Part shown: positions 10,509 to 47,313 of the stretch, piece after piece
Layout: each line of letters opens with the position of its first letter
Numbering within the stretch: position 1 is the stretch's first letter
IMG/VR virus record: IMGVR_UViG_3300024239_000014
Coordinates: 62,001 to 126,000 of that record
DNA length: 64,000 bases
Strand: one strand, 5' to 3'
Notes under the pieces: model-generated
Databases searched by the model: none
What the model was told of the DNA's origin: nothing
The model's input: the letters and a program-made list of their open reading frames with translations, nothing else
Translations under genes and position numbers: made by a program

Positions 10509-10653
10509 GGCAGTTCCTCAAACTAAGGATAAAGGGTAGGGCGGTTTATCGTATGGTACCTACCCTCTGACGGTAACATTCAGCCATAGATTGAGAGGGT
10601 GAAATACGCTTTTTATTCCCCCATTCAGTCCGATGGTCCACACGGAGTCGCCC

Positions 10654-28326: not shown

Positions 28327-29709
28327 ATGCCGGTTATTGCAACACCGCCAGGTCAGCATCCAGGTCCGTGGCAGCTCACGATCCCTGAAGCAGGGTCGGT
28401 AACACTGCGGTACCGCGTTTCAGACGGTAAAGGCGGGTTCTTCACTCGCACGGCCATCGCATCTGCCATCGTACCTGTGGTCGGGTATGACTACTACGCC
28501 AATAAGTTCGGCCTCTATCGCAAAACTGTGAACTCGCTGGCCGCGTTTTTGACAGTGCCATCTCACTCGGTCGTTGCGGGCACAGTGTCCGACGAATGGC
28601 GGTTCGGTATCAAACTTAAAACCTGGGAGCCTTACACAGCTGGTACCCAAGGCATTGCTTGTCTATGTCGAGGTACGACGTCGAACACAGAAGAGGTCTT
28701 CATCATCAGTAACCTGGGACCGATCTCGATCAAGTATGTCGGCGGTACCACGGTAACTTTGACTGGAAACCATGGGATTCAACTTGGTCAGCGCGTTGAT
28801 TTTCGTTTGATTGTACCGTCAGTTGTCGGTCAACCAATCGAACTTTACGCCAGGATTAACAACGGCGCTGAATTTCTGATGGGTAGTGCGCTGACGCCTG
28901 CATCGTCTGGATTCAATCCGAATCGTTGGCTCTCCGGTAACCAGGGCATCAACGGGATGCTGTTCTACGTAGAGCGGTATCGTGATGGCGTACCTCTTTA
29001 CCAGTTCACGTTTAATGACTTCTGGTCCACGACGTTCTTGTCGCGTCACGATCCTCAGGTAACCGCAGTCTTGACAAAAGTCAGCGGCCACATTGAGCCT
29101 CAGGTGGATGTCACTGAATGGACGCCAGCGACGCCGGCTGACGACTTAGTCGCTGTAACACGTGTCACGACGGCGTCGCTGTCGGTCGATCGACGGATGG
29201 TGCTGACGGGTATTAGCGCACGACCTGCTGGCGTTGCCAGGCGTTATCTGTCGTGGGTGCGCACTCACGACCTGACGTACGACCTGGGTCTTTGCAGTAT
29301 CGGCACCACCGAAACCGTTCGGTTCAATGCCGATGGATCGATCAGCGCGCGTGTTACTGGCATGAGCAGCACTGTCGTAATGCGACCTGCCGGTCCTCAT
29401 GTCTTGACGGGCACGAAGCAGTTGATCGAATTGGTCGTGACTGATGACCGTTTCCAGGTCAAGGTGGATGGTGTGTTGGTTGCTGAACACGTGGCCAATG
29501 GTCTGTCGTTCATTCCTGGCCAATACCTGGAAGGTGCGTCTGGTACCACCATCTGGCGCGGTCGCCTGTACAACCTCGCAGTGTACAACGACGACACCCT
29601 GATTGAGTACTGGCCATTGGATGTAGGCGAAGGAGTCGGTGTAATGACCAACACAGTTGGTACTGCTGTTGCGACATTGGGTTCTGCCAATACGTGGGTC
29701 CACGGATAA
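28327..29709 (+). CDS. Fibre-associated protein: half cadherin-like repeat plus two LamG-like domains
   Basis: AAGGAGG SD. Starts GPWQLT..TLRYRVSDGKGG; next domain is paralogous to the C-terminus of the 23038 gene; C-terminal FQVKVDG..WRGRLYNLAVY..YWPLD. Confidence 0.75.
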   Translation: MPVIATPPGQHPGPWQLTIPEAGSVTLRYRVSDGKGGFFTRTAIASAIVPVVGYDYYANKFGLYRKTVNSLAAFLTVPSHSVVAGTVSDEWRFGIKLKTWEPYTAGTQGIACLCRGTTSNTEEVFIISNLGPISIKYVGGTTVTLTGNHGIQLGQRVDFRLIVPSVVGQPIELYARINNGAEFLMGSALTPASSGFNPNRWLSGNQGINGMLFYVERYRDGVPLYQFTFNDFWSTTFLSRHDPQVTAVLTKVSGHIEPQVDVTEWTPATPADDLVAVTRVTTASLSVDRRMVLTGISARPAGVARRYLSWVRTHDLTYDLGLCSIGTTETVRFNADGSISARVTGMSSTVVMRPAGPHVLTGTKQLIELVVTDDRFQVKVDGVLVAEHVANGLSFIPGQYLEGASGTTIWRGRLYNLAVYNDDTLIEYWPLDVGEGVGVMTNTVGTAVATLGSANTWVHG

Positions 29710-29718
29710 GTGTCATAG

Positions 29719-29755
29719 CGGGAGGGTCGAAAAGACCCTCCCGTTTTTTCTTTTT
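29719..29755 (+). terminator. Intrinsic terminator
   Basis: CGGGAGGGTC-GAAAA-GACCCTCCCG plus long U-tract. Confidence 0.85.
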
Positions 29756-29843: not shown

Positions 29844-31922
29844 ATGCCTCAGAATTTGGTGATTAAGTACCCTCTTGACCTGTCAGGGAATAACCCCACG
29901 AACCTGGTCAAGAATGAACCGCACACGATTGAGCCTACGGCCACGAATCGCGGTTTTGCATTGAACTACGGCCCTTTCTACACCAAGAGTGTAGTGGTCA
30001 AACACGTGGAATCAGGGAACTACCTGAGACCACGCCTGGATTACCTGTGCCTCCATCTGGATGAAATCGCTACGCGTGAATCTGGATACGAGGTCTGCAT
30101 CGCCATCCTCATTACCAACCAGACCTACAATGGTGAATTTGAAGTCACCTATCAGGTCGTGGGTGGCGAGTACAGTAGCTACGTGTCAGTGATTCAGCAG
30201 CTGGTAGAAGCACTCCAGCTCGATGACCGTCCTGTCAAGTGGGGCGATGTGATTGGTAAGCAGGATGAATACCCACCTGCGCCACACCTGCATACCCCGG
30301 ATGATCTGTACGGCTTTGAATTCCTTGTTGACGCATTGATGCGTCTGCACCAGGCGATTCTGCACGGCGATGCAACAGATCATGCGCAGATGAGACAAAA
30401 CATTCTCAATGCGCGCGCTTACGCCGAGCAATTGGCCGCCGGTGTACGCGAAGTCCTCGATCTTCACGTTACCAACCAGAACGATCCTCACAACGTCACT
30501 AAACTCCAGGTGGGTTTGGGGAATGTCGATAACTTTGCTACCGCCACGCCAGAAGAAGCGGCCAGTGCAACGGTGGCTAATAAGTTCCTGACGCCAGCGT
30601 TGTTGCATGGGGCAATACCGAACAGTTTGCCGATTACCCAGATCAATGGCGAAATTCAGCGTTTGTGGGACGCCATCAACGCCATCAACGCCATCCTCGC
30701 CCTCGGCAAGGGCACCACCACGATCTGGAACACCCTGACTGCGTGGTCGACACTGCGTCAGACGATGGCGGTGGCAAGTCGTAGCACGACTGTGCTTATC
30801 CCGGCTGGCCCGGATCGAACCAGTTCGTGGAATACTTCTTTCACAACTGCGTGGTCGTCTGATCGCCTGACAAACCGCATGACATCCATCGGTAGCAACT
30901 GGAACACGTCCTTCACTCAGAACACGACACGAACTACAAACGTGTCGGTGGTGACGGTATGGAACACCAATACGTCCCGCAACACCGGGTACAGTAAGGT
31001 GACCCAGACGTCTGAGAATATCGTGCAGAACACGTCAGTGTCATCAAGTAAGATCACGTCGTATCAGACCAGTTGGACGACGGAGATGGGGGTGGTAACC
31101 CGTACTTCTTCGTGGGTGACCGGTTTCTATTCGATCGCTTATATCGGACGTGAAACGTCGACTACAAACTACCAACAAGTATGGCAGGAACAGTCGAAGA
31201 ACACGAACACGTCGTGGTACAGTTACACTCCCATTGTGTCGTACCGTGCAGATGGGGCCGGCGGTAACGGGTGGCAAACGGTAGGTTTTACCCGTACGCT
31301 TAAATCACGTACGACGTCAACGACCGTAGGGCCGAGCAGCCGTGCCACGCAAACGACCTTTGCCACTGAATGGACCAGTGGTGGTTTCCGTCAGATGATC
31401 ATGACATGGAAAACCACGAGTACGCAGATTGGTGGCAACGTGTCGGCGTATGTCAGTACGACCTTCAACACTAACTTCTACACTGCGTTCCCGAAAGAAA
31501 GGTCCACATCGACCACAGTCTCGTCGCCGAACCTGGTACCTATGAGTCGCCAGACCAGCAAAACGACCAACACCACATTTAGTCGTGTGACATCGTTTAA
31601 CCAATCGCGCGACACCACCACGGCATGGACCATTGCTACGTCTTGGGCTACTCAGTATTCCAAGACAACCGCATGGGATCGTACCACGGACGTGATCACC
31701 AACATTGTTCAACAGACCAGTAATGCAGCAATGGTGCAAACCAACTTCAATACTGCTGTTGCAATGTCCAAAAGTACATCTGTGGTCACATCTGTGACAG
31801 TGGCTGGAGATAGCGAACGCCATAGTTCACGCCAGACCTCTTGGGATTCGACGTGGGGTACTGAGGCGAACACCAGCCAGATGACCCAGTTCATCCGCAA
31901 CACGCAGACGAGCTTTACGTAA
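29844..31922 (+). CDS. Virion fibre with Thr/Ser-rich (mucin-like) C-terminal domain
   Basis: N-terminal KYPLDLSG..EPH..YGPFY anchor domain and DPHNVTKLQVGLGNVDN repeat; last 403 aa contain 155 Thr+Ser by hand count. Confidence 0.8.
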   Translation: MPQNLVIKYPLDLSGNNPTNLVKNEPHTIEPTATNRGFALNYGPFYTKSVVVKHVESGNYLRPRLDYLCLHLDEIATRESGYEVCIAILITNQTYNGEFEVTYQVVGGEYSSYVSVIQQLVEALQLDDRPVKWGDVIGKQDEYPPAPHLHTPDDLYGFEFLVDALMRLHQAILHGDATDHAQMRQNILNARAYAEQLAAGVREVLDLHVTNQNDPHNVTKLQVGLGNVDNFATATPEEAASATVANKFLTPALLHGAIPNSLPITQINGEIQRLWDAINAINAILALGKGTTTIWNTLTAWSTLRQTMAVASRSTTVLIPAGPDRTSSWNTSFTTAWSSDRLTNRMTSIGSNWNTSFTQNTTRTTNVSVVTVWNTNTSRNTGYSKVTQTSENIVQNTSVSSSKITSYQTSWTTEMGVVTRTSSWVTGFYSIAYIGRETSTTNYQQVWQEQSKNTNTSWYSYTPIVSYRADGAGGNGWQTVGFTRTLKSRTTSTTVGPSSRATQTTFATEWTSGGFRQMIMTWKTTSTQIGGNVSAYVSTTFNTNFYTAFPKERSTSTTVSSPNLVPMSRQTSKTTNTTFSRVTSFNQSRDTTTAWTIATSWATQYSKTTAWDRTTDVITNIVQQTSNAAMVQTNFNTAVAMSKSTSVVTSVTVAGDSERHSSRQTSWDSTWGTEANTSQMTQFIRNTQTSFT

Positions 31923-31937
31923 CAAACTCACCTATGT

Positions 31938-31966
31938 AGGGGGCTTCGGCCCCCTCATTTATTCCG
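31938..31966 (+). terminator. Short hairpin (attenuator or processing site) inside the fibre-GT operon
   Basis: AGGGGGC-TTCG-GCCCCCT then CATTTATTCCG. Confidence 0.6.
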
Positions 31967-31976
31967 GAAGTTGAAA

Positions 31977-32225
31977 ATGGACAAATCCGTTGCTATCGAA
32001 TTTGAAAAGCTCAACACACGCGTTGCCGAGCTTGAAAAGCGCCTGGTTGCTGCTGAGGAACAGGCAAAGAACGCCGAGCAATTGGCACAAGAGTCGTTGC
32101 GCCTTGTTGAACGTGCGTCATCGCTCCTGGTGGAACATATCGCTACCTTCGATACCCGTGTGGCGGAAGCCTCGGATATTATCGTGGCTCGTGTGACCAA
32201 GCAGATCCCGCACTTGATGTTGTAA
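31977..32225 (+). CDS. Small coiled-coil protein
   Basis: About 82 aa with heptads LNTRVAELEKRLVAAEEQA; lies between the fibre and the GT genes. Confidence 0.7.
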   Translation: MDKSVAIEFEKLNTRVAELEKRLVAAEEQAKNAEQLAQESLRLVERASSLLVEHIATFDTRVAEASDIIVARVTKQIPHLML

Positions 32226-32240
32226 CGGAGTAGTTGACCC

Positions 32241-33104
32241 ATGAGTGATAGCAATAAAAAGAAAAAGGCTTCGTTGGACATTGTCCTGGCTAACACTTAT
32301 GCTTCTGAAGCCAATAAGGTAGCACACAGCGGGTACCTGACTCGCGCCGGTAAGATTCGTGAATCAAACCGCATTGCTGAGCTGCTGGTGGCCGGGGCCG
32401 CGAAGCGCAAGATCAAAATCCAGTACGATATTGCTTACGATGGCCATCCTCATGAGTTATCGTTCACGGAATGCTTTGGTGGCATGGGTGGTGTTTATAT
32501 CAGACCTGCGGACAGCAACCTGTCGCGGCAGATGCTGGCTTCACCGTTTAGAGCAACTCGTGATATCAACTTTCTCTTGAATGCTGAAGACAAATACGCG
32601 CAGCTACCCATCCACTGTCCGGTTGATCACGTGATCTTCCTGCCCGGTACGAACCTTCTGGATCGGTATAAGGCCGAAGTGTTCCGACCCTATTACAGAG
32701 AAGGCGTTAAGGTCAAACCACACCCCATCACGAGCGAGTATTTCCGTTTTCTGCTCCTGCGTGAATTTGGTTCAGACGTCCTTCCTCTTAAGGGTTCGGC
32801 ACAGTCGATCCTAAAGCAGGTGAAAGAAGTCACCGTGACGCAGCACACGGAGATGGGTCTTTACGCCCTATTGCAAGGCAAGAAGGTTAACGTCATCCCA
32901 GCAATGAAGGGACTGTTACCGGTGTACCGGTACTTCTACGAAACAGGTGAGCGCCTCAAGGAGGTGTTGTCGTCCCACCTGTCGGGTTTGTTCTTCATGA
33001 ACGATAACATCGAAGAACAGATCGAAGAATGGTTCGATTATTATCAATCCCAGTCCCAACTGCGTCAAACACGTTTCTTCGACGTGTTTGGAGGTAAACG
33101 ATGA
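32241..33104 (+). CDS. Putative GT-B glycosyltransferase, capsule-synthesis (KpsC/KpsS-like) type
   Basis: VKVKPHP and EVTVTQHTEMGLYALLQGKKV resemble the KxHP and V-x-T-x-x-S-x-x-G-x-EA-x-x-x-GK-x-V motifs of that fold. Confidence 0.5.
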   Translation: MSDSNKKKKASLDIVLANTYASEANKVAHSGYLTRAGKIRESNRIAELLVAGAAKRKIKIQYDIAYDGHPHELSFTECFGGMGGVYIRPADSNLSRQMLASPFRATRDINFLLNAEDKYAQLPIHCPVDHVIFLPGTNLLDRYKAEVFRPYYREGVKVKPHPITSEYFRFLLLREFGSDVLPLKGSAQSILKQVKEVTVTQHTEMGLYALLQGKKVNVIPAMKGLLPVYRYFYETGERLKEVLSSHLSGLFFMNDNIEEQIEEWFDYYQSQSQLRQTRFFDVFGGKR

Positions 33105-34054
33105 TTCTGTTCTCCTGCACTAACCGCGCTTATCAGGACGTGTCCTTGGTTTGGGCTCATTCGTTCAAGAACAGCTGCGAGAAGTTCGAAAACAATAAGA
33201 AGTTCACACCAATTCTTTTTTGCACGACCGATGTCGATACCGAACTCTTTGCTGATACAGGCATTGAAATTCGGTACTTGCCCACCATTGGTGGGGTGGA
33301 AGAAGGATTGTTCAATCAGACGACCACCGAAGGGATGGTGATGCGACTGAAAGCCATGGATCTCTTGCACGCTGAAGGCGTGGAAAAGGTCGCGTACATG
33401 GACACAGACACTTTGATCCGTGGTGACATCAGTGAATTGTTGTTGGCACCACTGACGCCCGAGAAACCAATAGCAGCGGCTTCCGACTTCGTGTACATCG
33501 ATGACGACCGCCTGGGATCGACGTACCAACAAATCGTCCCCGATTATCCGCGCAGAACATCGATCAACAAGAAGTACTTCAACTCCGGTGTGATGGTTCT
33601 GCTTCTAAGGCCGTTGGTGGAAGAAACCAAACGCTACGGCTGTACGTCGTTGGAATCCTTTTATCTGAAGCACAAGGAAATGTGCCGGTTCCCTGATCAA
33701 GACGCACTCAATAAGCTGGCAAGGGAATATGTCGGCCTACCGCGTCGGTACAACTTCTTCCCTGAGCTGCACATCTTCGCGATCATGTCCAGTGATGAAC
33801 TAATGCACCACCGTGCACGTATCTTCCGTGAAGGGGTGATCGTGCACTTCTTGTCATTGTTCAAACCCTGGGTCAAACATGATTATGTTAACACGGCAAC
33901 AATGCAAGTCCCATTTGAAATGTACTGGGAAGCATTGAAGCCCATCCGACACAAGCTGTCGCCTTCGTTCGTTGAAAATGTGCGTTATAACGTGGAAACG
34001 CATCGCATCATCATCGAGCAGGCCAGACACGGTCATTACAACGCCGAGGATTAA
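33101..34054 (+). CDS. Glycosyltransferase family 8
   Basis: VAYMDTD (DxD), YFNSGVMVL, FPDQDALN, IVHF..KPW. Confidence 0.92.
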   Translation: MILFSCTNRAYQDVSLVWAHSFKNSCEKFENNKKFTPILFCTTDVDTELFADTGIEIRYLPTIGGVEEGLFNQTTTEGMVMRLKAMDLLHAEGVEKVAYMDTDTLIRGDISELLLAPLTPEKPIAAASDFVYIDDDRLGSTYQQIVPDYPRRTSINKKYFNSGVMVLLLRPLVEETKRYGCTSLESFYLKHKEMCRFPDQDALNKLAREYVGLPRRYNFFPELHIFAIMSSDELMHHRARIFREGVIVHFLSLFKPWVKHDYVNTATMQVPFEMYWEALKPIRHKLSPSFVENVRYNVETHRIIIEQARHGHYNAED

Positions 34055-34055
34055 C

Positions 34056-34883
34056 ATGGCCGACGTTACAGTGATCATTCCAGCTTCTCGAGCTTTTACC
34101 TTAGAAGAGTGTTTGGTACACCTTAAGAGAAGCGTCGGGGTAACCTATCGCCTGATTGTAGTGCTGGCAAATCGTGATCCAGCATTGCGTAAACTGGCTC
34201 AGGGCGCCGGGGCTGAGATCATTGAACATTATGCCAAAGGTGACCAGCATAAGGCCAGGGCAATTGCCCTGGCCTCTGTAACCACCGAATTTGTTCATTT
34301 CTTAGATGACGACGATTTCATCTGCCCTGAATTCTTAAGAGACGGTGTTGCACTACTAAGAGATGATTCTACATGTGGCGTTGCGTTCAGTCTGCCATTT
34401 AAATCGGTGGGTGTTAGGAACGTACTCATTGGTCCGCATTTTCAAGCAGGGTTTGTTAATCCAAGCTGCACGATTTATCGCACCAAGATGATCCGTGAAG
34501 TCTTTGCGATGCTACCTGAGCCGGTGCTTTCCTCTTCTGAGGACAAGTTGTACACGCTTGTGTTAGCTTCGATCTTCCGTGCGAAATTCCGGTGTTTCAG
34601 AGCACCTGTAGTCCGCGGTTCCTTCGTAGAGAACCGGAAGGTCTGGGACACCCTAATGTCGAAATCTCTCTACGACTTTTGGTACCGGATCTTGCTACTT
34701 TTACCGGAATATCAAGACGATGCCGTTGCTGATCATTACGTCAGAACGGTATTGGCAGAAACCCGACAATGGTACACCCGATGCGTCACCTACTCTTTAC
34801 CTGTATCAATCGACATTATGAAAATCAGGGGATCGTTTGGTTATCAGCACTTAGAACCTTGGCCCAATCAGCACCAGTGTTGA
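34056..34883 (+). CDS. Glycosyltransferase family 2
   Basis: Start MADVTVIIPA; FVHFLDDDD and a downstream ED motif (SSEDKL). Confidence 0.85.
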   Translation: MADVTVIIPASRAFTLEECLVHLKRSVGVTYRLIVVLANRDPALRKLAQGAGAEIIEHYAKGDQHKARAIALASVTTEFVHFLDDDDFICPEFLRDGVALLRDDSTCGVAFSLPFKSVGVRNVLIGPHFQAGFVNPSCTIYRTKMIREVFAMLPEPVLSSSEDKLYTLVLASIFRAKFRCFRAPVVRGSFVENRKVWDTLMSKSLYDFWYRILLLLPEYQDDAVADHYVRTVLAETRQWYTRCVTYSLPVSIDIMKIRGSFGYQHLEPWPNQHQC

Positions 34884-35779
34884 AGGATTGTCGGATCATT
34901 CTTTTCCACGCCCACGATGTAAATCTTCAGCGATTTAAAGACGCCTTCCCTGACATCGAGTACCGTCTCGTCAAAAGTCCGATCGAAGGTAAGACCAAGC
35001 TGTTCAGCGCTCCGGTTAGCGAAGGAATGTGCTTGCGCATTGACGCTATGGATCAACTAATCCAAGAAGGAGTTGACAAGGTAGTCTACTCTGATGCCGA
35101 TGCGGTGTGGTTCAAGGATCCTGCCAAATTGTTCGACACACCGGTTGACGCGGTTCATCGTTTTGCAGCGGTACGCGACATGGTGTATCAAAAGCACCCT
35201 GAGTTTAAAGAAGCCTACCCCATTGCATGTCGCGATTGGGGTCACCGACAGGCTATCAGTGACAACTACTTCAACTCAGGTGTGATGGTTGTTTCGCTCA
35301 AGGGGTTATCGGATTACCTAACACTATTGGGTAATGCGTCACTGACAGAATACGTACAGCAGAACCAACACCGGTACCTCTTTCCGGACCAAGATCCGCT
35401 GAACGAACTAGGCCACAATCGCATCGAGCTTCCACGCGAATTCAATGCCTACATTGATCACGTGGTCGGTCATTCGATGACTGCCTGTGAAGTAATGGAA
35501 AACCGTTACAAGATTTCGCAGTCTGCTATCATTCATTGGATCACCATGACCAAACCCTGGTTACATGAACGTGAACCGAGTTTGACTAGCGCTGCCATGC
35601 CCCACGAGAAGTACTGGGAAGCTATGCAACCCGTACTGGAGTTTCTTGATGGGGGTTTTATTAAAGCTGTCTCGATCAAGCTTCGGCAGTATGCCCACCT
35701 CGTGGAGCATGCCAAGCGCGATTTCAAGGAAGTCGGAGGCTACCACCATGACACGTACCGTTGTTTCGTGCGTAAATAA
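34781..35779 (+). CDS. Glycosyltransferase family 8
   Basis: VVYSDAD, YFNSGVMVV, FPDQDPLN, IIHW..KPW; start MRHLLFTC. Confidence 0.92.
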   Translation: MRHLLFTCINRHYENQGIVWLSALRTLAQSAPVLKDCRIILFHAHDVNLQRFKDAFPDIEYRLVKSPIEGKTKLFSAPVSEGMCLRIDAMDQLIQEGVDKVVYSDADAVWFKDPAKLFDTPVDAVHRFAAVRDMVYQKHPEFKEAYPIACRDWGHRQAISDNYFNSGVMVVSLKGLSDYLTLLGNASLTEYVQQNQHRYLFPDQDPLNELGHNRIELPREFNAYIDHVVGHSMTACEVMENRYKISQSAIIHWITMTKPWLHEREPSLTSAAMPHEKYWEAMQPVLEFLDGGFIKAVSIKLRQYAHLVEHAKRDFKEVGGYHHDTYRCFVRK

Positions 35780-36653
35780 GGCGTACAGTGATCCATTAAA
35801 AGTCTGGCTCAGTGTAATGGCTGAGCAACCCTCGCACCCTCACGTGATCCTGTATCACGCCAGCGACATTGATCCCAATGATTTCCCCACCTCAGTGGAG
35901 GTCACGTGGCGGTTGCTGGATGTGCCTACTCAGAAGTCCACCAGACCTCATCGCCGTCAAGGTATCCTGATGCGGTTTCTGGCGTTCGATGATCTCCATG
36001 CGCGCAAGATGACCCACATCGTGTACATGGATCTCGATGCGTTACCTTTTGGTAACCTGTCACCACTTCTGAATGTGCCGGTGCGTGCATCCTCACCCAT
36101 TGCCGCTGTACCTGATTTGGTGTTCCTGGGGTCTAAGCAGTACGACGCGTACTACGACCGGAGTCGTCCTGAAATCGTACATCGTTTGAACTTCAATCCG
36201 CGGTATTTCAATGCTGGGGTGATGGCGATTTATTTGCCAGGACTCTATGCGCGGTTAAACGGCAAGACGTTGTACGAGTATTGGGAAGAAAACAAACACC
36301 GGTACTTGTTTCATGGTCAGGACCCATTGAATGAACTGGTACCTGATTATACGCCTTTACCGGCGACCTTTAACGCCTTTGCCGATCTGTACATTGCACC
36401 GAAGATGACTGAACATCAACGTGAGTTGCACACCTCGGTGATTAGCAATGCCGCTATCGTGCATTGGCTATCCAATACAAAGCCGTGGGAGGCGCTTAGC
36501 AACATTCCAGTTGCTTGGGCTATGATGCCTCACCAGTTGTACTGGGATGCAGCACAACGCGTTTTAGACCGCTTAAGCGAGGGGTTTGTAACGGCACTTA
36601 CTGAAAACCTCCGACGATACGAGGAACTGACGCATGACGAAGCCGTTGTGTAG
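35748..36653 (+). CDS. Glycosyltransferase family 8
   Basis: GGAGG SD; IVYMDLD, YFNAGVMAI, GQDPLN, IVHW..KPW. Confidence 0.9.
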   Translation: MTRTVVSCVNKAYSDPLKVWLSVMAEQPSHPHVILYHASDIDPNDFPTSVEVTWRLLDVPTQKSTRPHRRQGILMRFLAFDDLHARKMTHIVYMDLDALPFGNLSPLLNVPVRASSPIAAVPDLVFLGSKQYDAYYDRSRPEIVHRLNFNPRYFNAGVMAIYLPGLYARLNGKTLYEYWEENKHRYLFHGQDPLNELVPDYTPLPATFNAFADLYIAPKMTEHQRELHTSVISNAAIVHWLSNTKPWEALSNIPVAWAMMPHQLYWDAAQRVLDRLSEGFVTALTENLRRYEELTHDEAVV

Positions 36654-37677
36654 GGCACCGTTCACGACCTTTAACCACAAACCCGAAGGGTATCGGCCGT
36701 GTTGTCAACGTCAGAACCCGGCAGTAGTGCACACCGATGGTAACTGGTGGAATTCTGAATACCTGCGTGAATTCAGGAAATCCATGTTTTCCTACGACAC
36801 CCTATCAGACGTGTGTAAGCGGTGTTACGACCGCAAAACTGCCGATGATCCGGGATACAGTTTACCATTCGATCTCAAGGACTATAACCCCAAGACGGGC
36901 GAAGTATACGCACCGCCGAAACAAGTGCTGGTTTTTACAGGCACAAAGTGTGATCTGGCTTGCGATATGTGTGATTCGACTTTTTCGGATACGCATGCGA
37001 AGGTTTATCCTGACCGCATCATCGATATCGATGTGGTTACAGAAGACTCAGCCAGGCACATCATCGGCCGGTACAACCCAGAACAGGTGGTGATCTACGG
37101 TGGCGAACCTTTTGTTAGCCGTGAACTGTACCCGTTGGTACAGCTTGCTTTAATGAAACGGTCATCCATCACGTTCTTGACGAACGGTAACCGCGATCTG
37201 GCTAAACACCCGGTGTTTAAAGAGCTCGTACTGCCGAACGCTACTCGTTTCTCATTTATCTTTTCGATAGATGGGACTGCCGATGTCAACGAACAGATCC
37301 GCAAAGGAGTACGCACTGAACAGATCCTCAGCAATGTTGAATTGTGCAGAAGTGAAAAGATTTGGCACGAACTCCATTTTACGTGTTCGAAGCTTAATGC
37401 GCATAACCTGACTGCTTTCGTCCGTTGGGTTTTATCGCTCGAGTGTTACATGGTCCCGTTCTTTTCGCTCTCAGTAGGGATTGTCGATTTTCCGGATGAT
37501 TATCGTGCAAGTACCTTGCCGATGGGCGAACGGTTATCAATCTCCCGCGACCTTTGTGCGTTAAAGGAAGAAATCAACTCGGCAGTAGACGCTGGAACCA
37601 TGGTGTTTACACCCAAACAGTTTTCTGACTTGATGACGGGACTGGATGGCACACTTGCTTCGTTGGATTTAGAATAG
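36634..37677 (+). CDS. Radical SAM protein with N-terminal twitch/SPASM-like Fe-S domain
   Basis: N-terminal CRAPF..RPCC..WNSEYLREFRKSM..CKRC; radical SAM motif CDLACDMC; YGGEPF; SIDG. Confidence 0.9.
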   Translation: MTKPLCRAPFTTFNHKPEGYRPCCQRQNPAVVHTDGNWWNSEYLREFRKSMFSYDTLSDVCKRCYDRKTADDPGYSLPFDLKDYNPKTGEVYAPPKQVLVFTGTKCDLACDMCDSTFSDTHAKVYPDRIIDIDVVTEDSARHIIGRYNPEQVVIYGGEPFVSRELYPLVQLALMKRSSITFLTNGNRDLAKHPVFKELVLPNATRFSFIFSIDGTADVNEQIRKGVRTEQILSNVELCRSEKIWHELHFTCSKLNAHNLTAFVRWVLSLECYMVPFFSLSVGIVDFPDDYRASTLPMGERLSISRDLCALKEEINSAVDAGTMVFTPKQFSDLMTGLDGTLASLDLE

Positions 37678-37686
37678 GGACATAAG

Positions 37687-37717
37687 CGGGAGGGCCTTTT
37701 GGCCCTCCCGTATGCCG
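37687..37717. terminator. Bidirectional hairpin with TATGCCG tail
   Basis: CATAAG-CGGGAGGGCC-TTTT-GGCCCTCCCG-TATGCCG at the convergence point. Confidence 0.8.
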
Positions 37718-37719
37718 CA

Positions 37720-37884
37720 TTACGCGTTCTCAGTTAACACCACTTTGGCCAATGAAACCCCAACGCACATGCAAGCGCTATACGGTGTTTCCAGGTCATC
37801 TGCTTTACAGTCGTTGAGTAACGAACGGTATTGCCGATCAATCTGCCGGCGGAGCCACTGCTGTAGTGTTTTCATTGATGTCAT
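37720..37884 (-). CDS. Small hypothetical protein
   Basis: About 54 aa from MTSMKT; fills the gap between the CYTH gene and the terminator. Confidence 0.4.
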   Translation of the reverse strand: MTSMKTLQQWLRRQIDRQYRSLLNDCKADDLETPYSACMCVGVSLAKVVLTENA

Positions 37885-38530
37885 CCCACGTAAGGTTAAT
37901 CTTCTCGTTGAATAACTCGTCAATGAGTGCTTGATCCTCAGCAGTACGTTTCCCGTACGGCTCAGTGATCGCCCGTTTCACCTGAAGCGGGAAAGCCGGT
38001 AACGTATCCAGCAGTGCAGGGACTTCCAAATCGGCCTTTACCCATGGACAGAACTGACCGTTCTTATCCTTGAAGAGATCGATCTCCCAACACAACGCTC
38101 CGTTGAACTTCGCATCGGGTTCCTTAAAAGTCCCCTCGGTGCCTGGAATAGGGAAGATGCAGCGGAGTTTCTGCCAGCCATTATCGGCAATTCGACGGAA
38201 GTGATCAAAGAGATCTTCGTTGACCTCCACAGTCACTTCAGGACGTCCTACAACGCCCTTGAGATTGAGTTTGCTGGTCAGCCAGTACGACGGTACACCT
38301 TCAACTGGTGTATTGTCTCTAAGGCCGCTTTCCGTGGCTTTGCGCACACGCACAGTTCCGGCCGGTTTACGAAGATGCCACTGTTCTTGCTCGATGAATT
38401 TGGCAGCACCTTTGACTGCCGCAATGTCTTCGAGTTCGTAGAAGTGGATGTATTCGATTTCATGTACCGTACCGGCACTATCGGATTCCTGCGACAGCGT
38501 CGCTAAGAGTGAGGTAATTGCACCTGTCAT
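37838..38530 (-). CDS. CYTH-domain (triphosphate tunnel metalloenzyme-like) protein
   Basis: HEIEY (ExE-x), VRVRK, LTSK..EV, K-x-R..F, WEIDLF, DLEV. Confidence 0.75.
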   Translation of the reverse strand: MTGAITSLLATLSQESDSAGTVHEIEYIHFYELEDIAAVKGAAKFIEQEQWHLRKPAGTVRVRKATESGLRDNTPVEGVPSYWLTSKLNLKGVVGRPEVTVEVNEDLFDHFRRIADNGWQKLRCIFPIPGTEGTFKEPDAKFNGALCWEIDLFKDKNGQFCPWVKADLEVPALLDTLPAFPLQVKRAITEPYGKRTAEDQALIDELFNEKINLTWDDINENTTAVAPPAD

Positions 38531-38591
38531 GGTATCACCTATAACACAAAACGGTTAGTCATACACAACATTAGAAGATTTGCGGCAAAAA

Positions 38592-38620
38592 AAAACAGAG
38601 GGTGGCAGTCCCTCTGTTTT
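38592..38620 (-). terminator. Intrinsic terminator
   Basis: AAAACAGAGGG-TGGCAGT-CCCTCTGTTTT with an A-run that reads as a U-tract on the minus strand. Confidence 0.75.
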
Positions 38621-38623
38621 CGT

Positions 38624-39514
38624 TTATGGTGTTGTGATTGCAACTTCGACCGTGTTGGCTAAAGTCTTGAATGCTTGTTCCAATACGCTTTGGATAGCAC
38701 GAATTGACTGTTCATCAACACCGCGACACCAAACCGGTAACTGGTACGTCCAACCAGCCAGTCGAATCTCAAAGACCACTGACGGGTCTCCGACTTCTTC
38801 CACTGTGGATGTCCGCATTTCCACCAAGGTCTTGAGGCTGTACACCCGTAAAGCATTGGCAACACTTTTAATGACATTTTCCGACATCAGTAAATGTTGA
38901 AATGCGTTGACCGACGCGAACTGGCGTTCCCGATTACTGTACTCGGGATTCGTTACAGTCATCTCAGCACCACCAGACCGATAATCCAACTGAATGGGAA
39001 CGTCAAAGATACGGGTCAAGTAGCCACTGAGGTTAGCCAAATAGGGCCCACGATGGGAACTTTTCATTGGCGGATCGTACCAGACTGGCATGGTGAGGAA
39101 TTCGCTCTGGTGGCACCAAAGGGAAATCTTCTTCCAATCTTGCTTGGGTGTAGCACTGACTCGACCTGATAAATATTCCAACACCTGGGTGACGCGTTGC
39201 TGATCCACCACTGCCAATGAATCACACAAGAAGTTATAGCCGAGTATTTTCACAACCACGGTATCGGCACCGAGGTCGAGGAGTTCCCAGCCATAACTCA
39301 CTGCGTTGGCAATTCCAGCTGCCCGCCCGACATCAGTCAGTGCGAGTCTATCACCCTTACCGAACGTTACGACCACTTCACGAACGGGATCGTAAATTTC
39401 GTAAACAACCGTGGTGCGTGTGATATCGGCCAGGTTCTTAAAGGTGGCTTCATCCGTGATGATGCCGTTACTCGGAGAATCCATCCGCCGCTTGAGGTAC
39501 TGTTCGTACATCAC
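38624..39514 (-). CDS. Hypothetical protein
   Basis: 296-aa clean ORF, AAGGA SD. Confidence 0.7.
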   Translation of the reverse strand: MMYEQYLKRRMDSPSNGIITDEATFKNLADITRTTVVYEIYDPVREVVVTFGKGDRLALTDVGRAAGIANAVSYGWELLDLGADTVVVKILGYNFLCDSLAVVDQQRVTQVLEYLSGRVSATPKQDWKKISLWCHQSEFLTMPVWYDPPMKSSHRGPYLANLSGYLTRIFDVPIQLDYRSGGAEMTVTNPEYSNRERQFASVNAFQHLLMSENVIKSVANALRVYSLKTLVEMRTSTVEEVGDPSVVFEIRLAGWTYQLPVWCRGVDEQSIRAIQSVLEQAFKTLANTVEVAITTP

Positions 39515-39600
39515 TCGCTTTCCTTATTCCAGCAGTCATTGAGTTGTCTGCTCATAGGTTAAAACGAACGGACAAAAAGAAAGGAAAGATGGTAAAAGTA

Positions 39601-39624
39601 GGTAGGAGAGAAGTCTCTCCTACC
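39601..39624 (-). terminator. Hairpin terminator
   Basis: GGTAGGAGAG-AAGT-CTCTCCTACC with a pyrimidine-rich tail on the minus strand. Confidence 0.65.
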
Positions 39625-39635
39625 CAGGGTGGTAG

Positions 39636-40016
39636 TTACTCGCCTTCGGTTTCGTCTTCCGCTGCTTCGAGCAGTTCCTCGTCGGTATACTCGAAGAAGT
39701 CGTACTCGGACGGTACCTGTTCAAATACCACCTTGATGACGCTCGAGTCAAACGAGTAGCGCCGGTCTTGTTCGATATCAAGGTCATCCACTACCTGGAA
39801 AGCCTTGTCGATCAGGGCGTCAGCGATCTTCTTGCAGCGCTCACTGTAGGCCGAACCGGACACCGACTTGACAGTGAGGTCTTCCAGAGCAACTGCCAGA
39901 TCGCCGTAGGTCGGCAATTGCACTTGGAGTTCTTGATGTTCCATCGCACCGTCCTCGCTGAGCAGCAGTACGATCTCAGGAGCCTTAAGCGTTACAGACA
40001 AACGAAATGTAGCCAT
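39636..40016 (-). CDS. Small acidic hypothetical protein
   Basis: 126 aa, 30 Asp/Glu vs 10 Lys/Arg by hand count. Confidence 0.75.
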   Translation of the reverse strand: MATFRLSVTLKAPEIVLLLSEDGAMEHQELQVQLPTYGDLAVALEDLTVKSVSGSAYSERCKKIADALIDKAFQVVDDLDIEQDRRYSFDSSVIKVVFEQVPSEYDFFEYTDEELLEAAEDETEGE

Positions 40017-45216: not shown

Positions 45217-47241
45217 TTACCAGAATACCGACGCTGGCTTATCAGTACCCGTTAACACGGTAACCGTGGACGGTAGTTCGTTATGCGGGCTAATCCCCAT
45301 GGATTCCAATACCACATCATCCAATGCAGAACTGTTACCCATGATGACGTCTACCTGCTGACGACTCCATTCCACCAGATCCATCGACCGTGTGGAAATG
45401 TTCGGTTGACCCTTGGTATCTAACAGGACGTTGACGATATGTACTGGTGAATCCTGATCCAACCGAGCTACACGAGCGGTAGCCTGCTCCACCACGTACT
45501 GGCGGAACGGTTGGTTAAACAAGATACAGGTATTGGCCATCACCAACGGCACTGCGGTACTCAGGGAATCGTACGTCGCAATCAACGGATTGGTTTCAAA
45601 GTCCTGATCGAACTGTTTGACGATCGCAGGGAGATTCTTCACCGTGTCACCGTAGACGACGATCGGTTTATACCCACGATCTTCAAAGTACTTCTTGAGG
45701 TTATCCACCACATCCACGTAGCTCGTAAAAATCACGGTTTTCTTTTCAGACCGGTCTACGAACGTTTCAATCCCCGAATGCTCCACCATGGCTGCAAAGC
45801 AATCGATTCTACGGCGCCCCAGTATGCGTCCTAGCGCTTCGCCGCGGATCTTCAGGTCTACGTACTTCACGACGCTGCGCGCGTCCATAAAGGGCTTACG
45901 GAGCCTGTCAGGCAGACTCGGCAATACCTTCTCCTTCTCGTACTTCGTACAGTACCGCGCAATCTCCTTGTGCAGTACCGGATCAAAACCTTTACGGATA
46001 GTCCTGACGTATTCGTTGTAGCGTTGATAGTCCTGCAACTGTGATCCGTGTAACGTACCTTCATGAATCTTCAGGCACGTGAAGTACAGATCTTCGAATT
46101 CCTTGAAGTGTTTTTTGTAGTACTCAGTACGTTCCACCACAAAGGCCGAGATTTCTATCCGAATCGCATCCAAGGTAAACCGGTCAGCACCGGGGAAACT
46201 GAACTTGTGGTCAATGGTGTCGACCGTCAGGGTCACGACCTCGGCCTTCTCCACTTTAAAGCTAGTCAACCCAATCCGGTTGGCCAGGATGTCGTTAGCA
46301 CGGCTGGCCGACTTGCCAAAGACTTTCATCATGGCCTGTGCGGCTTGGTCGTTAAACAGCGGATCGATGGTGCGCAGGAATGGAATGGCTTCAGAGCCAA
46401 TGGCTTTGATCGGCGTCCCTGACATCCAGGTAATACCGTCAGACTTTGACAGCTTACACAAGTCAATAAACTGCTGGGTGCGCAAGGATTCCGACGTATT
46501 CATGTTGTGGCATTCATCGAGGATGATGCTAAAAGACCGGTCCTGATGCTCACGTACAAACTGCAAAGCAGACGCCAACGATTCGTAATGGAACACTAAG
46601 AACTCATGTTCCTTGGTGGGTTTACCGGGCTTGATGGAGGTCCAGTATCGCGGAACCTCGTGGAACCACACTTCAAAGGTCTTGGACCAAACATCATGTA
46701 CTGCCACTTTAGGGCAAATTACAATGGTGTGGTCTTTCTTGGCTCCCAGTGCCACTGCCAGAGATGAAATGGTTTTACCAGTACCAGCGGCAGATGCGAG
46801 CATGTAGCCCAGCAGACCCATCTTCGGTCGAACACGACTAAAGATACGGAAGTATTCTTCCTGAGCCGGCTTCAAGTTAGCCTTCATGCGCTTGACTTGA
46901 GAAAAATCCAAGGTGTCGTGTTCCACGTCCTGGATCTTACTCAGCCAGGTGTGCTCATCCATCAGTTCGATGATGTGGCGGATGGCACGGACCTTGGTGT
47001 AACGACCAGGATTTTCCATGATCGTCTGCAATGCGTAACGCACTTCAATGGCAAAGAAGGATAAGAAGGTAAAGGAGTTCTTACCCAGGCTCAGGAACAT
47101 GTTGTTCCCAATACGGCTGGTTGACCAGATACGCATCAAATCGGATGAGATGTCATCGGCTGGAATCCCTTCGATGCGGATGATCCCTTTTTCTTCTACA
47201 ACCGTGGGGTTGCCAATCAACCGTTTCAACCCAGAAAACAT
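45217..47241 (-). CDS. Superfamily 2 helicase
   Basis: Walker A SAAGTGKT, DECH, MSGTP, C-terminal VIFT..QATARVARLDQ; start MFSGLKRL. Confidence 0.9.
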   Translation of the reverse strand: MFSGLKRLIGNPTVVEEKGIIRIEGIPADDISSDLMRIWSTSRIGNNMFLSLGKNSFTFLSFFAIEVRYALQTIMENPGRYTKVRAIRHIIELMDEHTWLSKIQDVEHDTLDFSQVKRMKANLKPAQEEYFRIFSRVRPKMGLLGYMLASAAGTGKTISSLAVALGAKKDHTIVICPKVAVHDVWSKTFEVWFHEVPRYWTSIKPGKPTKEHEFLVFHYESLASALQFVREHQDRSFSIILDECHNMNTSESLRTQQFIDLCKLSKSDGITWMSGTPIKAIGSEAIPFLRTIDPLFNDQAAQAMMKVFGKSASRANDILANRIGLTSFKVEKAEVVTLTVDTIDHKFSFPGADRFTLDAIRIEISAFVVERTEYYKKHFKEFEDLYFTCLKIHEGTLHGSQLQDYQRYNEYVRTIRKGFDPVLHKEIARYCTKYEKEKVLPSLPDRLRKPFMDARSVVKYVDLKIRGEALGRILGRRRIDCFAAMVEHSGIETFVDRSEKKTVIFTSYVDVVDNLKKYFEDRGYKPIVVYGDTVKNLPAIVKQFDQDFETNPLIATYDSLSTAVPLVMANTCILFNQPFRQYVVEQATARVARLDQDSPVHIVNVLLDTKGQPNISTRSMDLVEWSRQQVDVIMGNSSALDDVVLESMGISPHNELPSTVTVLTGTDKPASVFW

Positions 47242-47313
47242 AAAGATTCCTCTACCTAAAAATACCTCGACTATAACATGGAACAAGCAAAGATTTAAAA
47301 CTGATTTTGCGAC

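What the first reader, a model, noticed from the sequence alone, without database searches (positions are those of the whole stretch)
36634..37677. N-terminal-twitch radical SAM enzyme closing a glycosyltransferase operon
Seen: the auxiliary-cluster Cys motif (C..PF..PCC..CxxC) comes before the CxxxCxxC core, the reverse of the usual SPASM order. Established: SPASM/twitch enzymes include sugar dehydrogenases (BtrN), sulfatase maturases acting on Ser/Cys, and peptide modifiers. Inference: it oxidises or epimerises a sugar, or modifies Ser/Thr/Trp of the fibre, which would assign a role to an uncharacterised family.
Basis: partly seen in the sequence, partly recalled or inferred. Interest (0 to 1): 0.6.

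Follow-up and report, generated by a model that had tools for sequence, protein, structure and literature searches.

The report
Phage radical SAM enzyme partnered with glycosyltransferases
A 250-kb phage carries a radical SAM enzyme whose extra iron-sulfur motif sits at the front of the protein, and its relatives always lie beside, or are fused to, family-8 glycosyltransferases. It is therefore most likely a tailoring enzyme of a sugar-coating system for a Ser/Thr/Trp-rich tail fibre, though its actual reaction is unknown.

Summary
ORF 36634-37677 (+) encodes a 347-aa radical SAM protein with five conserved N-terminal Cys (C6, C23, C24, C61, C64; half-SPASM or "twitch" pattern) ahead of the core C106-x3-C110-x2-C113.

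The layout is already catalogued as NCBIfam NF033640 (N_Twi_rSAM). The match is E 8e-34 but below the curated cut-off. I found no paper on its function.

New here:
- The protein belongs to a well-supported clade of 13 modules that are all next to a GT8 gene, in at least seven phage or bacterial lineages.
- Four representative clusters are natural GT8-rSAM fusions.
- The recurring cassette is a small ORF, a ~280-aa KpsC/WbbB-like putative glycosyltransferase, GT2, one to three GT8s and the rSAM.
- In four lineages the cassette directly follows a Ser/Thr/Trp-rich module with a four-residue period. In the window this is the C-terminal 390 aa of the 692-aa fibre protein.
- In Photobacterium and Vibrio genomes GT8-rSAM-GT8 lies beside flagellar genes.

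Best reading (confidence 0.5): a tailoring enzyme that acts with GT8 on the glycan of a phage-made fibre glycoprotein. Modification of the repeat polypeptide, or of a host surface glycan, is not excluded. Structure searches do not discriminate between these.

The parts
36634..37677 (+). N-terminal-twitch radical SAM enzyme (P0001, 347 aa), the finding itself
   Evidence: Pfam PF04055 34.2 bits. NF033640 N_Twi_rSAM E 7.8e-34, 117.4 bits, below the cut-off of 170. phrog_14086 E 3.5e-36. AF2 model pLDDT 84.5, pTM 0.85. It is the only radical SAM gene in the 249,640-bp genome.
36649..36825 (+). N-terminal auxiliary-cluster (twitch-like) Cys motif: C6, C23, C24, C61, C64 with G19
   Evidence: Invariant. 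The pattern C-x12-G-x3-C(C) ... C-x2-C is the first half of the SPASM motif. Pfam SPASM matches the aligned region in relatives.
36949..36972 (+). Radical SAM core motif C106-x3-C110-x2-C113
   Evidence: The GGE SAM-binding motif G156-G157-E158 is also invariant.
35748..36653 (+). GT8 glycosyltransferase c (ORF opens at 35646; likely start ATG 35748 behind GGAGG)
   Evidence: PF01501 E 6.8e-22. Start and SD. DxD, YFNSG and H..KPW motifs kept. Its 3' end overlaps the rSAM start by 20 nt.
34769..35779 (+). GT8 glycosyltransferase b
   Evidence: PF01501 E 3.7e-18. Motifs kept.
34056..34883 (+). GT2 glycosyltransferase (ORF opens at 33972; likely start ATG 34056 behind GAGGA)
   Evidence: PF00535 E 4.1e-7. 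It is the only GT2 in the genome. Start.
33101..34054 (+). GT8 glycosyltransferase a
   Evidence: PF01501 E 4.3e-17. Start overlaps the stop of the preceding gene by 4 nt.
32241..33104 (+). ~280-aa protein P0169 (phrog_26179), a putative fifth glycosyltransferase of KpsC/WbbB (beta-Kdo transferase) type
   Evidence: phrog_26179 E 2e-28. AF2 pLDDT 78. Best fold matches are KpsC and WbbB: VIA Z 9.2, 208 aa aligned; Foldseek E 4.8e-4. H161-P162 is invariant, matching the HP motif of CMP-sugar GTs (PMC10148158). It travels with the cassette in other lineages.
31977..32225 (+). Small ORF (82 aa), likely coiled coil (judged by eye), between the fibre gene and P0169
   Evidence: Read from the sequence. 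It resembles the 78-aa ORF at the same position in L002, compared by eye and not aligned. A short ORF of 50-121 aa precedes the P0169 homologue in L003, L007, L053, L056, L060 and L065.
29844..31922 (+). 692-aa fibre / virion structural protein P0004, the candidate substrate
   Evidence: phrog_2163 virion structural protein E 3.7e-78, with tail and tail-collar-fibre PHROGs.
30741..31919 (+). Ser/Thr/Trp-rich module of P0004 (residues ~300-692) with a four-residue period
   Evidence: 34-48% S+T per 50 aa and 17 Trp. Bulky residues recur at lags 4 and 8 (1.9x, 1.5x) and are depleted at lags 1-3. It is the only real ORF of this kind in the genome.
31938..31955 (+). Hairpin after the fibre gene
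   Evidence: 7 bp, 6 GC. It may separate the fibre transcript from the cassette.
37687..37710 (.). GC-rich hairpin (10-bp stem, TTTT loop) between the cassette and the converging minus-strand genes
   Evidence: Read from the sequence. There is no U-tract, so the terminator scan did not list it.

Best explanation
P0001 is a two-cluster radical SAM enzyme of the N-terminal-twitch family.

Shown:
- It has the SAM-cleaving CxxxCxxC cluster site and a second, conserved five-Cys site at the N-terminus that is homologous to the SPASM/twitch motif.
- It belongs to a distinct clade whose members are always adjacent to, or fused with, GT8 glycosyltransferases.
- It is the last gene of a seven-gene unit: a small ORF, a KpsC/WbbB-like putative GT, GT8, GT2, GT8, GT8 and the rSAM. 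This unit follows the gene of a fibre protein with a Ser/Thr/Trp-rich tetrapeptide-repeat tail.

Inferred:
- The cassette O-glycosylates that tail, using host nucleotide sugars. The phage has no detectable CMP-sugar synthetase or SDR epimerase.
- The rSAM works together with a GT8 on the sugar. It would abstract a hydrogen atom from a sugar carbon, either on the residue GT8 has just added or on GT8's donor.
- The substrate radical would then be resolved in one of two ways. It could be oxidised through the auxiliary cluster (a BtrN-type two-electron oxidation). Or a hydrogen could be returned from the spare conserved Cys of the C23-C24 pair (a NeoN/HygY/EpeE-type epimerisation).
- Either route would give the fibre a sugar that the host does not supply.
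For: Identity:
- (motifs and family hits).
- (Pfam SPASM on the N-terminus of relatives).
- (confident model; radical SAM core fold, Z 12.5-14.4 to SkfB, BlsE, viperin, SuiB, CteB, anSME, MoaA).

Coupling to GT8:
- Fusions P0023-P0026 have a GT8 domain N-terminal and an N-twitch rSAM C-terminal, with E 1e-84 to 1e-97 to the profile. The GT8 catalytic motifs are intact in P0023, P0024 and P0026; P0025 departs at two of them.
- Synteny holds in the window, L002/L003, L007/L009, L010/L011, L053, L054, L065 and the bacterial L026/L027.
- In a tree of 108 N-twitch modules the window lies in a 13-row set that is entirely GT8-adjacent, SH-aLRT 97.
- All three GT8 genes, the one GT2 and the one rSAM of the 250-kb genome are in this cassette.

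Link to a protein acceptor:
- Ser/Thr/Trp repeat modules lie directly upstream in the window, L002/L003, L010/L011/L065 (a stand-alone 183-191-aa ORF) and L053 (two small ORFs).
- The cassette sits in the structural gene block, between fibre and virion genes.
- Bacterial relatives lie beside FliR-FlhB-FlhA-FlgF-FlgG-FlgA. Flagellins are classic O-glycoproteins (own knowledge).

Sugar-level rather than peptide-level:
- The repeat module occurs with the KpsC-like gene but without rSAM or GT8 in L060.
- GT8 occurs without rSAM in L056-L059.
- The rSAM of this clade never occurs without GT8 and fuses to it.
- The genome has no PF02348 or PF01370 gene.
Against: - No chemistry was tested, and no glycan has been shown on any of these fibres.
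- Fold and sequence matches tie peptide-modifying enzymes (SkfB, SuiB, CteB, anSME, EpeE) with sugar or nucleotide enzymes (BlsE, viperin, DesII).
- A fusion of two tailoring enzymes is also expected if both act on the same polypeptide.
- No repeat module was seen within the fetched flanks of L007/L009, L054 or L026/L027.
- A hairpin and a 285-nt gap separate the fibre gene from the cassette, so co-transcription is not shown.
- GT8 enzymes are best known from LPS core synthesis, and the window's GT8s give weak NCBIfam hits to LPS 3-alpha-galactosyltransferase.
- The complex prediction for GT8c with the rSAM gave no verdict.
Confidence: 0.5

Rival explanations
1. The rSAM modifies the polypeptide of the Ser/Thr/Trp repeat itself, alongside glycosylation. 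Candidate reactions are an aromatic-to-C-beta cyclophane or Trp cross-link within the [W/Y/F/R]-x-T-S repeats, oxidation of Ser/Thr as in anSME, or C-alpha epimerisation.
For: - The closest solved structures by Z and by sequence profile are peptide maturases: SkfB Z 14.4, SuiB 13.5, CteB 13.4, anSME 12.7, EpeE 12.6.
- The repeat places W, Y or F two residues before T/S. Of 17 Trp in the P0004 tail, 14 are W-x-[T/S]. This resembles the three-residue motifs of cyclophane-forming maturases (own knowledge).
- The repeat modules are encoded like precursors, right in front of the enzymes.
- Some distant N-twitch proteins carry TPR domains, which usually bind peptides.
Against: - There is no RRE or PqqD-like leader-binding domain. 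The N-terminus is the twitch motif.
- The repeat module exists with the KpsC-like gene but without any rSAM in L060.
- rSAM-GT8 pairs exist where no repeat module is in reach (L026/L027, L054, L007/L009).
- The tightest partner, including by fusion, is GT8, not the repeat.
Confidence: 0.25
2. The cassette does not touch the virion. It remodels a host surface glycan (LPS core, O-antigen or capsule) during infection, for example to block superinfection, as proposed for GT8-rich islands of pelagimyophages. In that case the rSAM tailors that glycan.
For: - GT8 is mainly known from LPS synthesis, and there are weak NCBIfam hits to LPS 3-alpha-galactosyltransferase.
- The KpsC/WbbB-like fold of P0169 comes from capsule and O-antigen enzymes.
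- PMC7029224 reports GT8 genes and radical SAM cassettes in the fibre-containing host recognition cluster of pelagimyophages, and interprets the GTs as O-chain modifiers.
- A hairpin separates the cassette from the fibre gene.
Against: - None of the six enzymes was checked for membrane anchors. I saw no flippase, polymerase or lipid-carrier gene in the cassette.
- The repeated co-location with Ser/Thr/Trp repeat ORFs in unrelated phage backbones has no explanation under this model.
- The cassette lies inside the structural block and runs in the same direction as it.
- The bacterial relatives sit in a flagellar cluster, not an LPS or capsule cluster.
Confidence: 0.15
3. The enzyme acts on nucleotides or phage DNA, for example a hypermodified base that is then glycosylated. 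It would then be only incidentally near fibre genes.
For: - There are weak family hits to QueE-type enzymes.
- Distant N-twitch paralogue arrays lie beside ThyX and a PP-loop ATPase.
- Phage GTs often glycosylate DNA (own knowledge).
Against: - These hits are generic radical SAM core similarity, far below the cut-offs.
- The ThyX context belongs to members of 21-26% identity that fall outside the GT8-adjacent clade.
- GT8 is not known as a DNA glycosyltransferase (own knowledge).
- The cassette lies in the virion module.
Confidence: 0.04

Closest known systems
NCBIfam NF033640 N_Twi_rSAM (twitch domain-containing radical SAM protein)
   Same: Same architecture: the twitch-type Cys motif precedes the CxxxCxxC core. 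The alignment is full-length (residues 4-309 to model positions 3-335 of 398), E 7.8e-34.
   Different: The score of 117.4 bits is below the curated cut-off of 170. P0001 is shorter (347 aa against a 398-position model) and belongs to a mainly viral, GT8-coupled clade. I found no paper that gives the family a function.
BtrN (twitch radical SAM dehydrogenase of butirosin biosynthesis); also the sugar epimerases NeoN and HygY
   Same: A radical SAM core plus one auxiliary cluster site with four Cys available. BtrN acts on a sugar-like carbon by H-abstraction followed by two-electron oxidation (PMC9012708). This is the working model for P0001.
   Different: In BtrN the twitch domain is C-terminal; here it is N-terminal. 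There is no specific sequence or fold similarity beyond the superfamily, and BtrN is not among the listed matches. P0001 has a fifth conserved Cys. NeoN and HygY are recalled from memory and were not tested.
SPASM/twitch peptide maturases (SkfB, SuiB, CteB, anSME, EpeE)
   Same: These are the best structural and profile matches to the core: Z 12.6-14.4, E 2e-8 to 1e-7.
   Different: Matches cover only model residues ~75-347. Their auxiliary domains are C-terminal, and several have an N-terminal RRE that P0001 lacks. The scores are tied with BlsE, viperin and PFL-AE.
Glycosylation of serine-rich repeat adhesins in streptococci (several GT8/GT2 enzymes extending O-glycans on Ser-rich repeats) and flagellin O-glycosylation
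   Same: A Ser/Thr-rich repeat acceptor is encoded beside several GT8 and GT2 genes. Bacterial relatives of the rSAM-GT8 pair lie in a flagellar cluster.
   Different: I know of no radical SAM enzyme in those systems (own knowledge). The repeat here has a four-residue period with Trp or Arg. The candidate initiating enzyme is KpsC/WbbB-like rather than GtfA/B or Maf.
Virion glycosylation by phage-encoded GTs in mycobacteriophages; GT8-rich host recognition clusters of pelagimyophages (PMC7029224)
   Same: Phage GT genes lie beside structural or fibre genes. PMC7029224 notes radical SAM cassettes in the same island.
   Different: The mycobacteriophage case is recalled from memory and has no rSAM. 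The pelagimyophage paper does not describe the N-terminal twitch, the fusions or the repeat modules, and it assigns the GTs to host O-chain modification.

Membership tests
Radical SAM superfamily | CxxxCxxC motif for the SAM-binding [4Fe-4S] cluster | tested here: met
   C106-x3-C110-x2-C113, invariant.
Radical SAM superfamily | Pfam PF04055 above the gathering score, and a partial TIM-barrel core fold | tested here: met
   34.2 bits against 29.5. AF2 pLDDT 84.5. Z 12.5-14.4 to solved radical SAM enzymes over residues ~75-347. The GGE motif G156-G157-E158 is invariant.
SPASM/twitch auxiliary domain | Cys pattern C-x9-15-G-x4-C ... C-x2-C (first half of the SPASM motif; pattern recalled from memory) | tested here: met
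   C6-x12-G19-x3-C23(C24) ... C61-x2-C64, all invariant across 11 modules of 18-61% identity.
SPASM/twitch auxiliary domain | Match to Pfam SPASM PF13186 | tested here: inconclusive
   No match in P0001 at E <= 1. The model does match the aligned N-terminal stretch of relatives P0027, P0028, P0040, P0044 and P0058, and in P0034 the matching stretch lies ahead of the second module.
SPASM/twitch auxiliary domain | Location as a C-terminal extension of the core (PMC9012708) | tested here: not met
   The motif is N-terminal, and no conserved Cys follows the core. This is the point of the finding.
SPASM/twitch auxiliary domain | Binds an auxiliary Fe-S cluster | not testable with these tools
   Needs iron and sulfide analysis, EPR or Moessbauer spectroscopy.
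NCBIfam NF033640 N_Twi_rSAM | Score at or above the curated cut-off (170 bits) | tested here: not met
   117.4 bits, E 7.8e-34, best family by far. P0001 is a divergent relative, not a member by NCBI's rule.
GT8-coupled N-twitch clade (defined here) | Falls in the supported clade, and a GT8 gene is adjacent or fused | tested here: met
   13-row set, SH-aLRT 97, all GT8-adjacent. The GT8c stop overlaps the rSAM start.
Sugar-acting twitch enzymes (BtrN type) | Specific similarity to BtrN, NeoN or HygY, or a demonstrated sugar substrate | tested here: inconclusive
   Only superfamily-level similarity. Sugar-acting BlsE and DesII score like the peptide maturases. The substrate cannot be tested with these tools.
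RiPP-type radical SAM maturases | RRE/PqqD-like recognition domain and a leader-bearing precursor | tested here: not met
   No such domain in Pfam or NCBIfam scans. The candidate substrates are a fibre tail or 118-258-aa ORFs, and no leader was recognised.
Phage-encoded virion glycosylation system | GT genes beside the structural gene they modify, and a glycan on the virion protein | tested here: inconclusive
   The gene arrangement is met. The glycan itself cannot be tested here.

The most novel reading that the evidence does not exclude
GT8 and the N-twitch radical SAM enzyme would form one catalytic unit, sometimes one polypeptide. That unit would install a sugar or a linkage that ordinary glycosyltransfer cannot give, on four-residue [W/Y/F/R]-x-T-S repeats. 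Examples are an in-situ epimerised or oxidised sugar, or a radical-made C-C or ether bond between the glycan and Trp or Thr. This would be a previously unrecognised type of protein glycosylation, shared by phage fibres and a flagellar system of Vibrionaceae. The abundance of tandem N-twitch modules further suggests that the N-terminal position of the cluster arose by duplication and circular permutation.
Probability: 0.15. Interest if true: 0.85.

Novelty: new variant of a known kind. Interest (0 to 1): 0.62.

Why it matters
The N-terminal-twitch radical SAM proteins form a very large family: 1,295 clusters at 50% identity score E <= 1e-30 to the profile. They are mostly viral in the ESM Atlas neighbourhood, and I could find no published function.

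This window gives the family its first concrete, testable context:
- an obligate partnership with GT8 glycosyltransferases, including natural fusions;
- a compact cassette;
- an obvious candidate substrate that can be co-expressed in E. coli.

If the fibre is indeed glycosylated, this would extend phage-encoded virion glycosylation beyond mycobacteriophages to marine and Vibrionaceae phages. It would also bear on host recognition and on how fibres escape proteases or receptors. It could reinterpret the GT8/radical-SAM islands of pelagimyophages and cyanomyophages as fibre-decorating rather than host-modifying.

For radical SAM enzymology, an auxiliary cluster domain moved to the other end of the chain is a natural test of what the twitch domain does.

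Tried and rejected
- Complex prediction of GT8c (35748-36653) with the rSAM: no verdict, score 0.00, controls not run. This is no evidence either way.
- Foldseek and VIA searches of the rSAM model gave only the superfamily core. They cannot tell sugar-acting from peptide-acting enzymes and do not cover residues 1-75.
- Megablast of 30000-40000 against GenBank phages: no match.
- Literature: searches for an N-terminal twitch, for twitch plus glycosyltransferase, for the NCBI product name, for GT8 plus radical SAM plus phage, and for O-linked virion or tail glycosylation by phage glycosyltransferases found nothing on this family or system.
- KVP40: the record's note that KVP40.0274, two genes from the KVP40 homologue, matches PF00534 (GT1) was not reproduced by my Pfam scan. 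KVP40 is therefore not counted as GT-linked.
- Missing contexts: the contexts of P0018 (Salinivibrio) and P0030 could not be read.
- Distant members (21-26% identity) lie in arrays of many rSAM paralogues without GT8. Vibrio phage K566 is the exception. The GT8 link is therefore claimed for the clade only, not for the whole family.
- One-to-one orthology between the fused GT8 domains and the window's three GT8s could not be established; the paralogues are ~30% identical.
- No other genetic code was needed. No reads tools were used.
Full report
WHAT THE WINDOW IS. The window is bases 62001-126000 of a 249,640-bp IMG/VR virus record, about 90% complete. It is a jumbo phage with 51.5% GC. It has no close DNA relative among GenBank phages. 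The region 14-32 kb carries fibre and virion structural genes on the + strand. From 37.8 kb the genes run on the - strand; one further down, at 45217-47286, is a DNA helicase.

THE OBSERVATION.
- ORF 36634-37677 (+) encodes 347 aa.
- These eight Cys and G19 are invariant in alignments that reach down to 18% identity. The four later Cys are not conserved.
- The pattern C-x12-G-x3-C ... C-x2-C is the first half of the SPASM motif, that is, a twitch-type site.
- Pfam's SPASM model does not score on P0001. It does match the aligned N-terminal stretch of more distant relatives.
- The literature describes SPASM and twitch as C-terminal extensions (PMC9012708), so the order here is indeed reversed.
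- The layout is not unrecorded. NCBIfam NF033640, 'N_Twi_rSAM', is the best family hit, with E 7.8e-34 and a full-length alignment. At 117 bits it misses the curated cut-off of 170. phrog_14086 also matches.
- A database gene call for this protein (P0005, 316 aa) appears to start at V32, judged from its length and coverage, and cuts off three of the five Cys. Conservation of the N-terminus and a GAGGA 8-9 nt before the ATG support the long ORF.

THE FAMILY.
- A profile search of 1.84 billion representatives found 1,295 clusters at E <= 1e-30.
- Of 164 proteins examined (the listed hits plus the word-search hits), 35 are tandem double or triple N-twitch modules. Four (P0023-P0026) carry a complete GT8 domain in front of the N-twitch module. 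The DxD, YFNSG and H..KPW motifs are intact in three of the four; P0025 departs at two of them. Some distant members carry TPR repeats.
- The nearest ESM Atlas clusters are 69-100% viral.
- KVP40-like Vibrio phages carry up to four copies at about 28% identity.

THE NEIGHBOURHOOD. In the window the rSAM is the last of seven co-directional genes:
- a small ORF, likely coiled coil by eye (31977-32225);
- P0169 (32241-33104);
- GT8a (33101-34054);
- GT2 (34056-34883);
- GT8b (34769-35779);
- GT8c (35748-36653);
- the rSAM.
Starts and stops touch or overlap. Hairpins bound the unit at 31938-31955 and 37687-37710. These are the only GT8, GT2 and radical SAM genes in the whole genome. There is no CMP-sugar synthetase (PF02348) or SDR epimerase (PF01370).

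P0169 (phrog_26179) has no Pfam or NCBIfam hit. Its model (pLDDT 78) matches the retaining beta-Kdo transferases KpsC and WbbB best: Z 9.2 over 208 residues, Foldseek E 4.8e-4. The family has an invariant His-Pro, the one motif these enzymes share with CMP-sialic acid transferases (PMC10148158). I therefore read it as a probable fifth glycosyltransferase, at moderate confidence.

RECURRENCE ELSEWHERE. The same set of genes surrounds every relative of 37% identity or more whose context I could read:

| Locus | Identity | Gene order |
|---|---|---|
| L002/L003 | 46-47% | fibre, small ORF, P0169, GT8, GT2, GT8, rSAM |
| L007/L009 | fusions | extra rSAMs, P0169, GT2, GT8, one or two GT8-rSAM fusions, GT8s |
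| L010/L011 (61-63-kb phage) | 41-43% | tail fibre, 183-aa ORF, P0169, GT2, GT8, rSAM, internal virion protein, tail fibre |
| L065 | not computed (profile E 3e-131) | fibre, 191-aa ORF, small ORF, P0169, GT2, GT8, rSAM, rSAM, GT8 |
| L053 | 38% | two small ORFs, P0169, GT2, GT8, rSAM, GT8 |
| L054 (temperate) | 41% | GT2, GT8, rSAM |

In the genomes of Photobacterium kasasachensis and Vibrio sp. MEBiC08052 (37%), GT8-rSAM-GT8 lies next to FliR, FlhB, FlhA, FlgF, FlgG and FlgA, with TPR proteins on either side.

A maximum-likelihood tree of 108 N-twitch modules puts the window in a 13-row group, SH-aLRT 97, in which every member is GT8-adjacent. Members at 21-26% identity lie in arrays of many rSAM paralogues without GT8. 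Vibrio phage K566 is an exception, with rSAM, GT8, rSAM, rSAM.

THE CANDIDATE SUBSTRATE.
- The gene before the cassette, P0004 (692 aa, phrog_2163 virion structural protein with tail-fibre PHROG hits), has an ordinary N-terminal 300 residues.
- Its remaining ~390-residue tail has 34-48% Ser+Thr per 50 residues and 17 Trp.
- Bulky residues (W, F, Y, R, K) recur every fourth position. Lags 4 and 8 are enriched 1.5-1.9 fold and lags 1-3 are depleted.
- Modules with the same period, stronger still (up to 2.9 fold), occur in several places: as the fibre tail in L002/L003; as stand-alone ORFs right before the cassette in L010/L011/L065 and L053; and before a lone P0169 homologue in L060, where Ser+Thr reach 60%.
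- In the window's genome P0004 is the only real ORF of this kind.

WHAT IT MOST LIKELY DOES. The following is shown: a radical SAM enzyme with a conserved second cluster site, obligately partnered with GT8, inside a glycosyltransferase cassette that repeatedly accompanies Ser/Thr/Trp repeat modules of fibre-associated proteins.

The rest is inferred. The cassette would glycosylate the repeat, and the rSAM would tailor the sugar. Three points favour sugar over polypeptide:
- The repeat can occur with P0169 alone.
- GT8 can occur without the rSAM (L056-L059).
- The rSAM of this clade never occurs without GT8 and fuses to it.
The phage also has no other detectable way to make an unusual sugar.

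With four Cys for a fully ligated auxiliary cluster and one to spare, either a BtrN-type two-electron oxidation or a thiol-dependent epimerisation is plausible. I cannot choose between them.

The main rival is direct modification of the repeat polypeptide. It is supported by the top structural matches being peptide maturases and by the W-x-[T/S] spacing. Those matches are tied with BlsE, viperin and PFL-AE, and they cover only the core. A host-glycan role, as proposed for pelagimyophage GT8 islands (PMC7029224), does not explain the repeat modules or the flagellar context. The complex prediction gave no verdict.

VERDICT.
- The enzyme is a divergent relative of a catalogued but functionally unknown family.
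- The GT8-coupled clade, the fusions, the cassette and its repeat-module partner appear undescribed in the literature I could search.
- The chemistry is open and directly testable.

Noticed in passing
window 36634-36729: A database gene call for this protein (P0005, 316 aa) appears to start at V32, inferred from its length and 91% coverage rather than inspected. It would drop C6, C23 and C24, so automated annotation hides the N-terminal cluster motif.
   Followed up: yes
window 31977-32225: An 82-aa ORF, coiled-coil-looking by eye, lies between the fibre gene and P0169. By eye it resembles the 78-aa ORF at the same place in L002. Short ORFs of 50-121 aa precede the P0169 homologue in most other loci. 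It may be a chaperone or part of the cassette.
   Followed up: partly
window 32241-33104 (P0169, phrog_26179): This protein of unknown function folds like the retaining beta-Kdo transferases KpsC and WbbB and has an invariant His-Pro. It is a probable CMP-sugar glycosyltransferase family that no sequence library recognises. It also occurs without the rSAM in ~200-kb phages (L056-L059) and in L060-L062.
   Followed up: partly
window 30741-31919; L010:7032-7583; L053:561-1355; L060:8953-9729; L065:2042-2617: These are Ser/Thr/Trp-rich modules with a strict four-residue period ([W/Y/F/R/K]-x-T-S), up to 60% Ser+Thr. I could not name their fold or family.
   Followed up: partly
window 10633-12576: A 647-aa ORF is a paralogue of the N-terminal part of the fibre protein P0004 (phmmer E 2.5e-29) but lacks the Ser/Thr/Trp tail.
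   Followed up: no
window 29717-29745 and 37687-37710: Two hairpins share the stem core GGGAGGG. They may be a reused phage terminator element.
   Followed up: no
window 23017-28239 (P0002, 1740 aa) and 28327-29709 (P0003): A giant structural protein shows repeated ~90-aa units containing D-x-D-G-D/N-type motifs. P0003 begins with what looks like a fragment of the same unit. Neither was scanned against family libraries in depth.
   Followed up: no
P0027-P0141; L024, L039, L043: 35 of 164 proteins examined are tandem double or triple N-twitch modules, and some genomes carry 7-10 paralogues in a row. In a tandem protein the second module's twitch follows the first core. Duplication followed by loss of the ends could therefore have produced the N-terminal position (circular permutation).
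   Followed up: no
L026:438-8206 and L026:16755-20837: In Photobacterium kasasachensis the GT8-rSAM-GT8 trio lies between a flagellar gene block (FlgA, FlgG, FlgF, FlhA, FlhB, FliR, TPR protein) and a 1360-aa protein. The C-terminus of that protein matches the type VI effector Tse6 (E 1e-31).
   Followed up: partly
L016:7278-8625: In marine phage contigs with distant N-twitch paralogue arrays, ThyX and a PP-loop (QueC/Asn-synthase-like) ATPase sit among the rSAM genes. This hints at a different, possibly nucleotide-related, role for those branches.
   Followed up: no
L005:4701-5702 (KVP40.0274): The GenBank note says this gene matches PF00534 (GT1). My Pfam scan at E <= 0.01 found no glycosyltransferase family.
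   Followed up: yes
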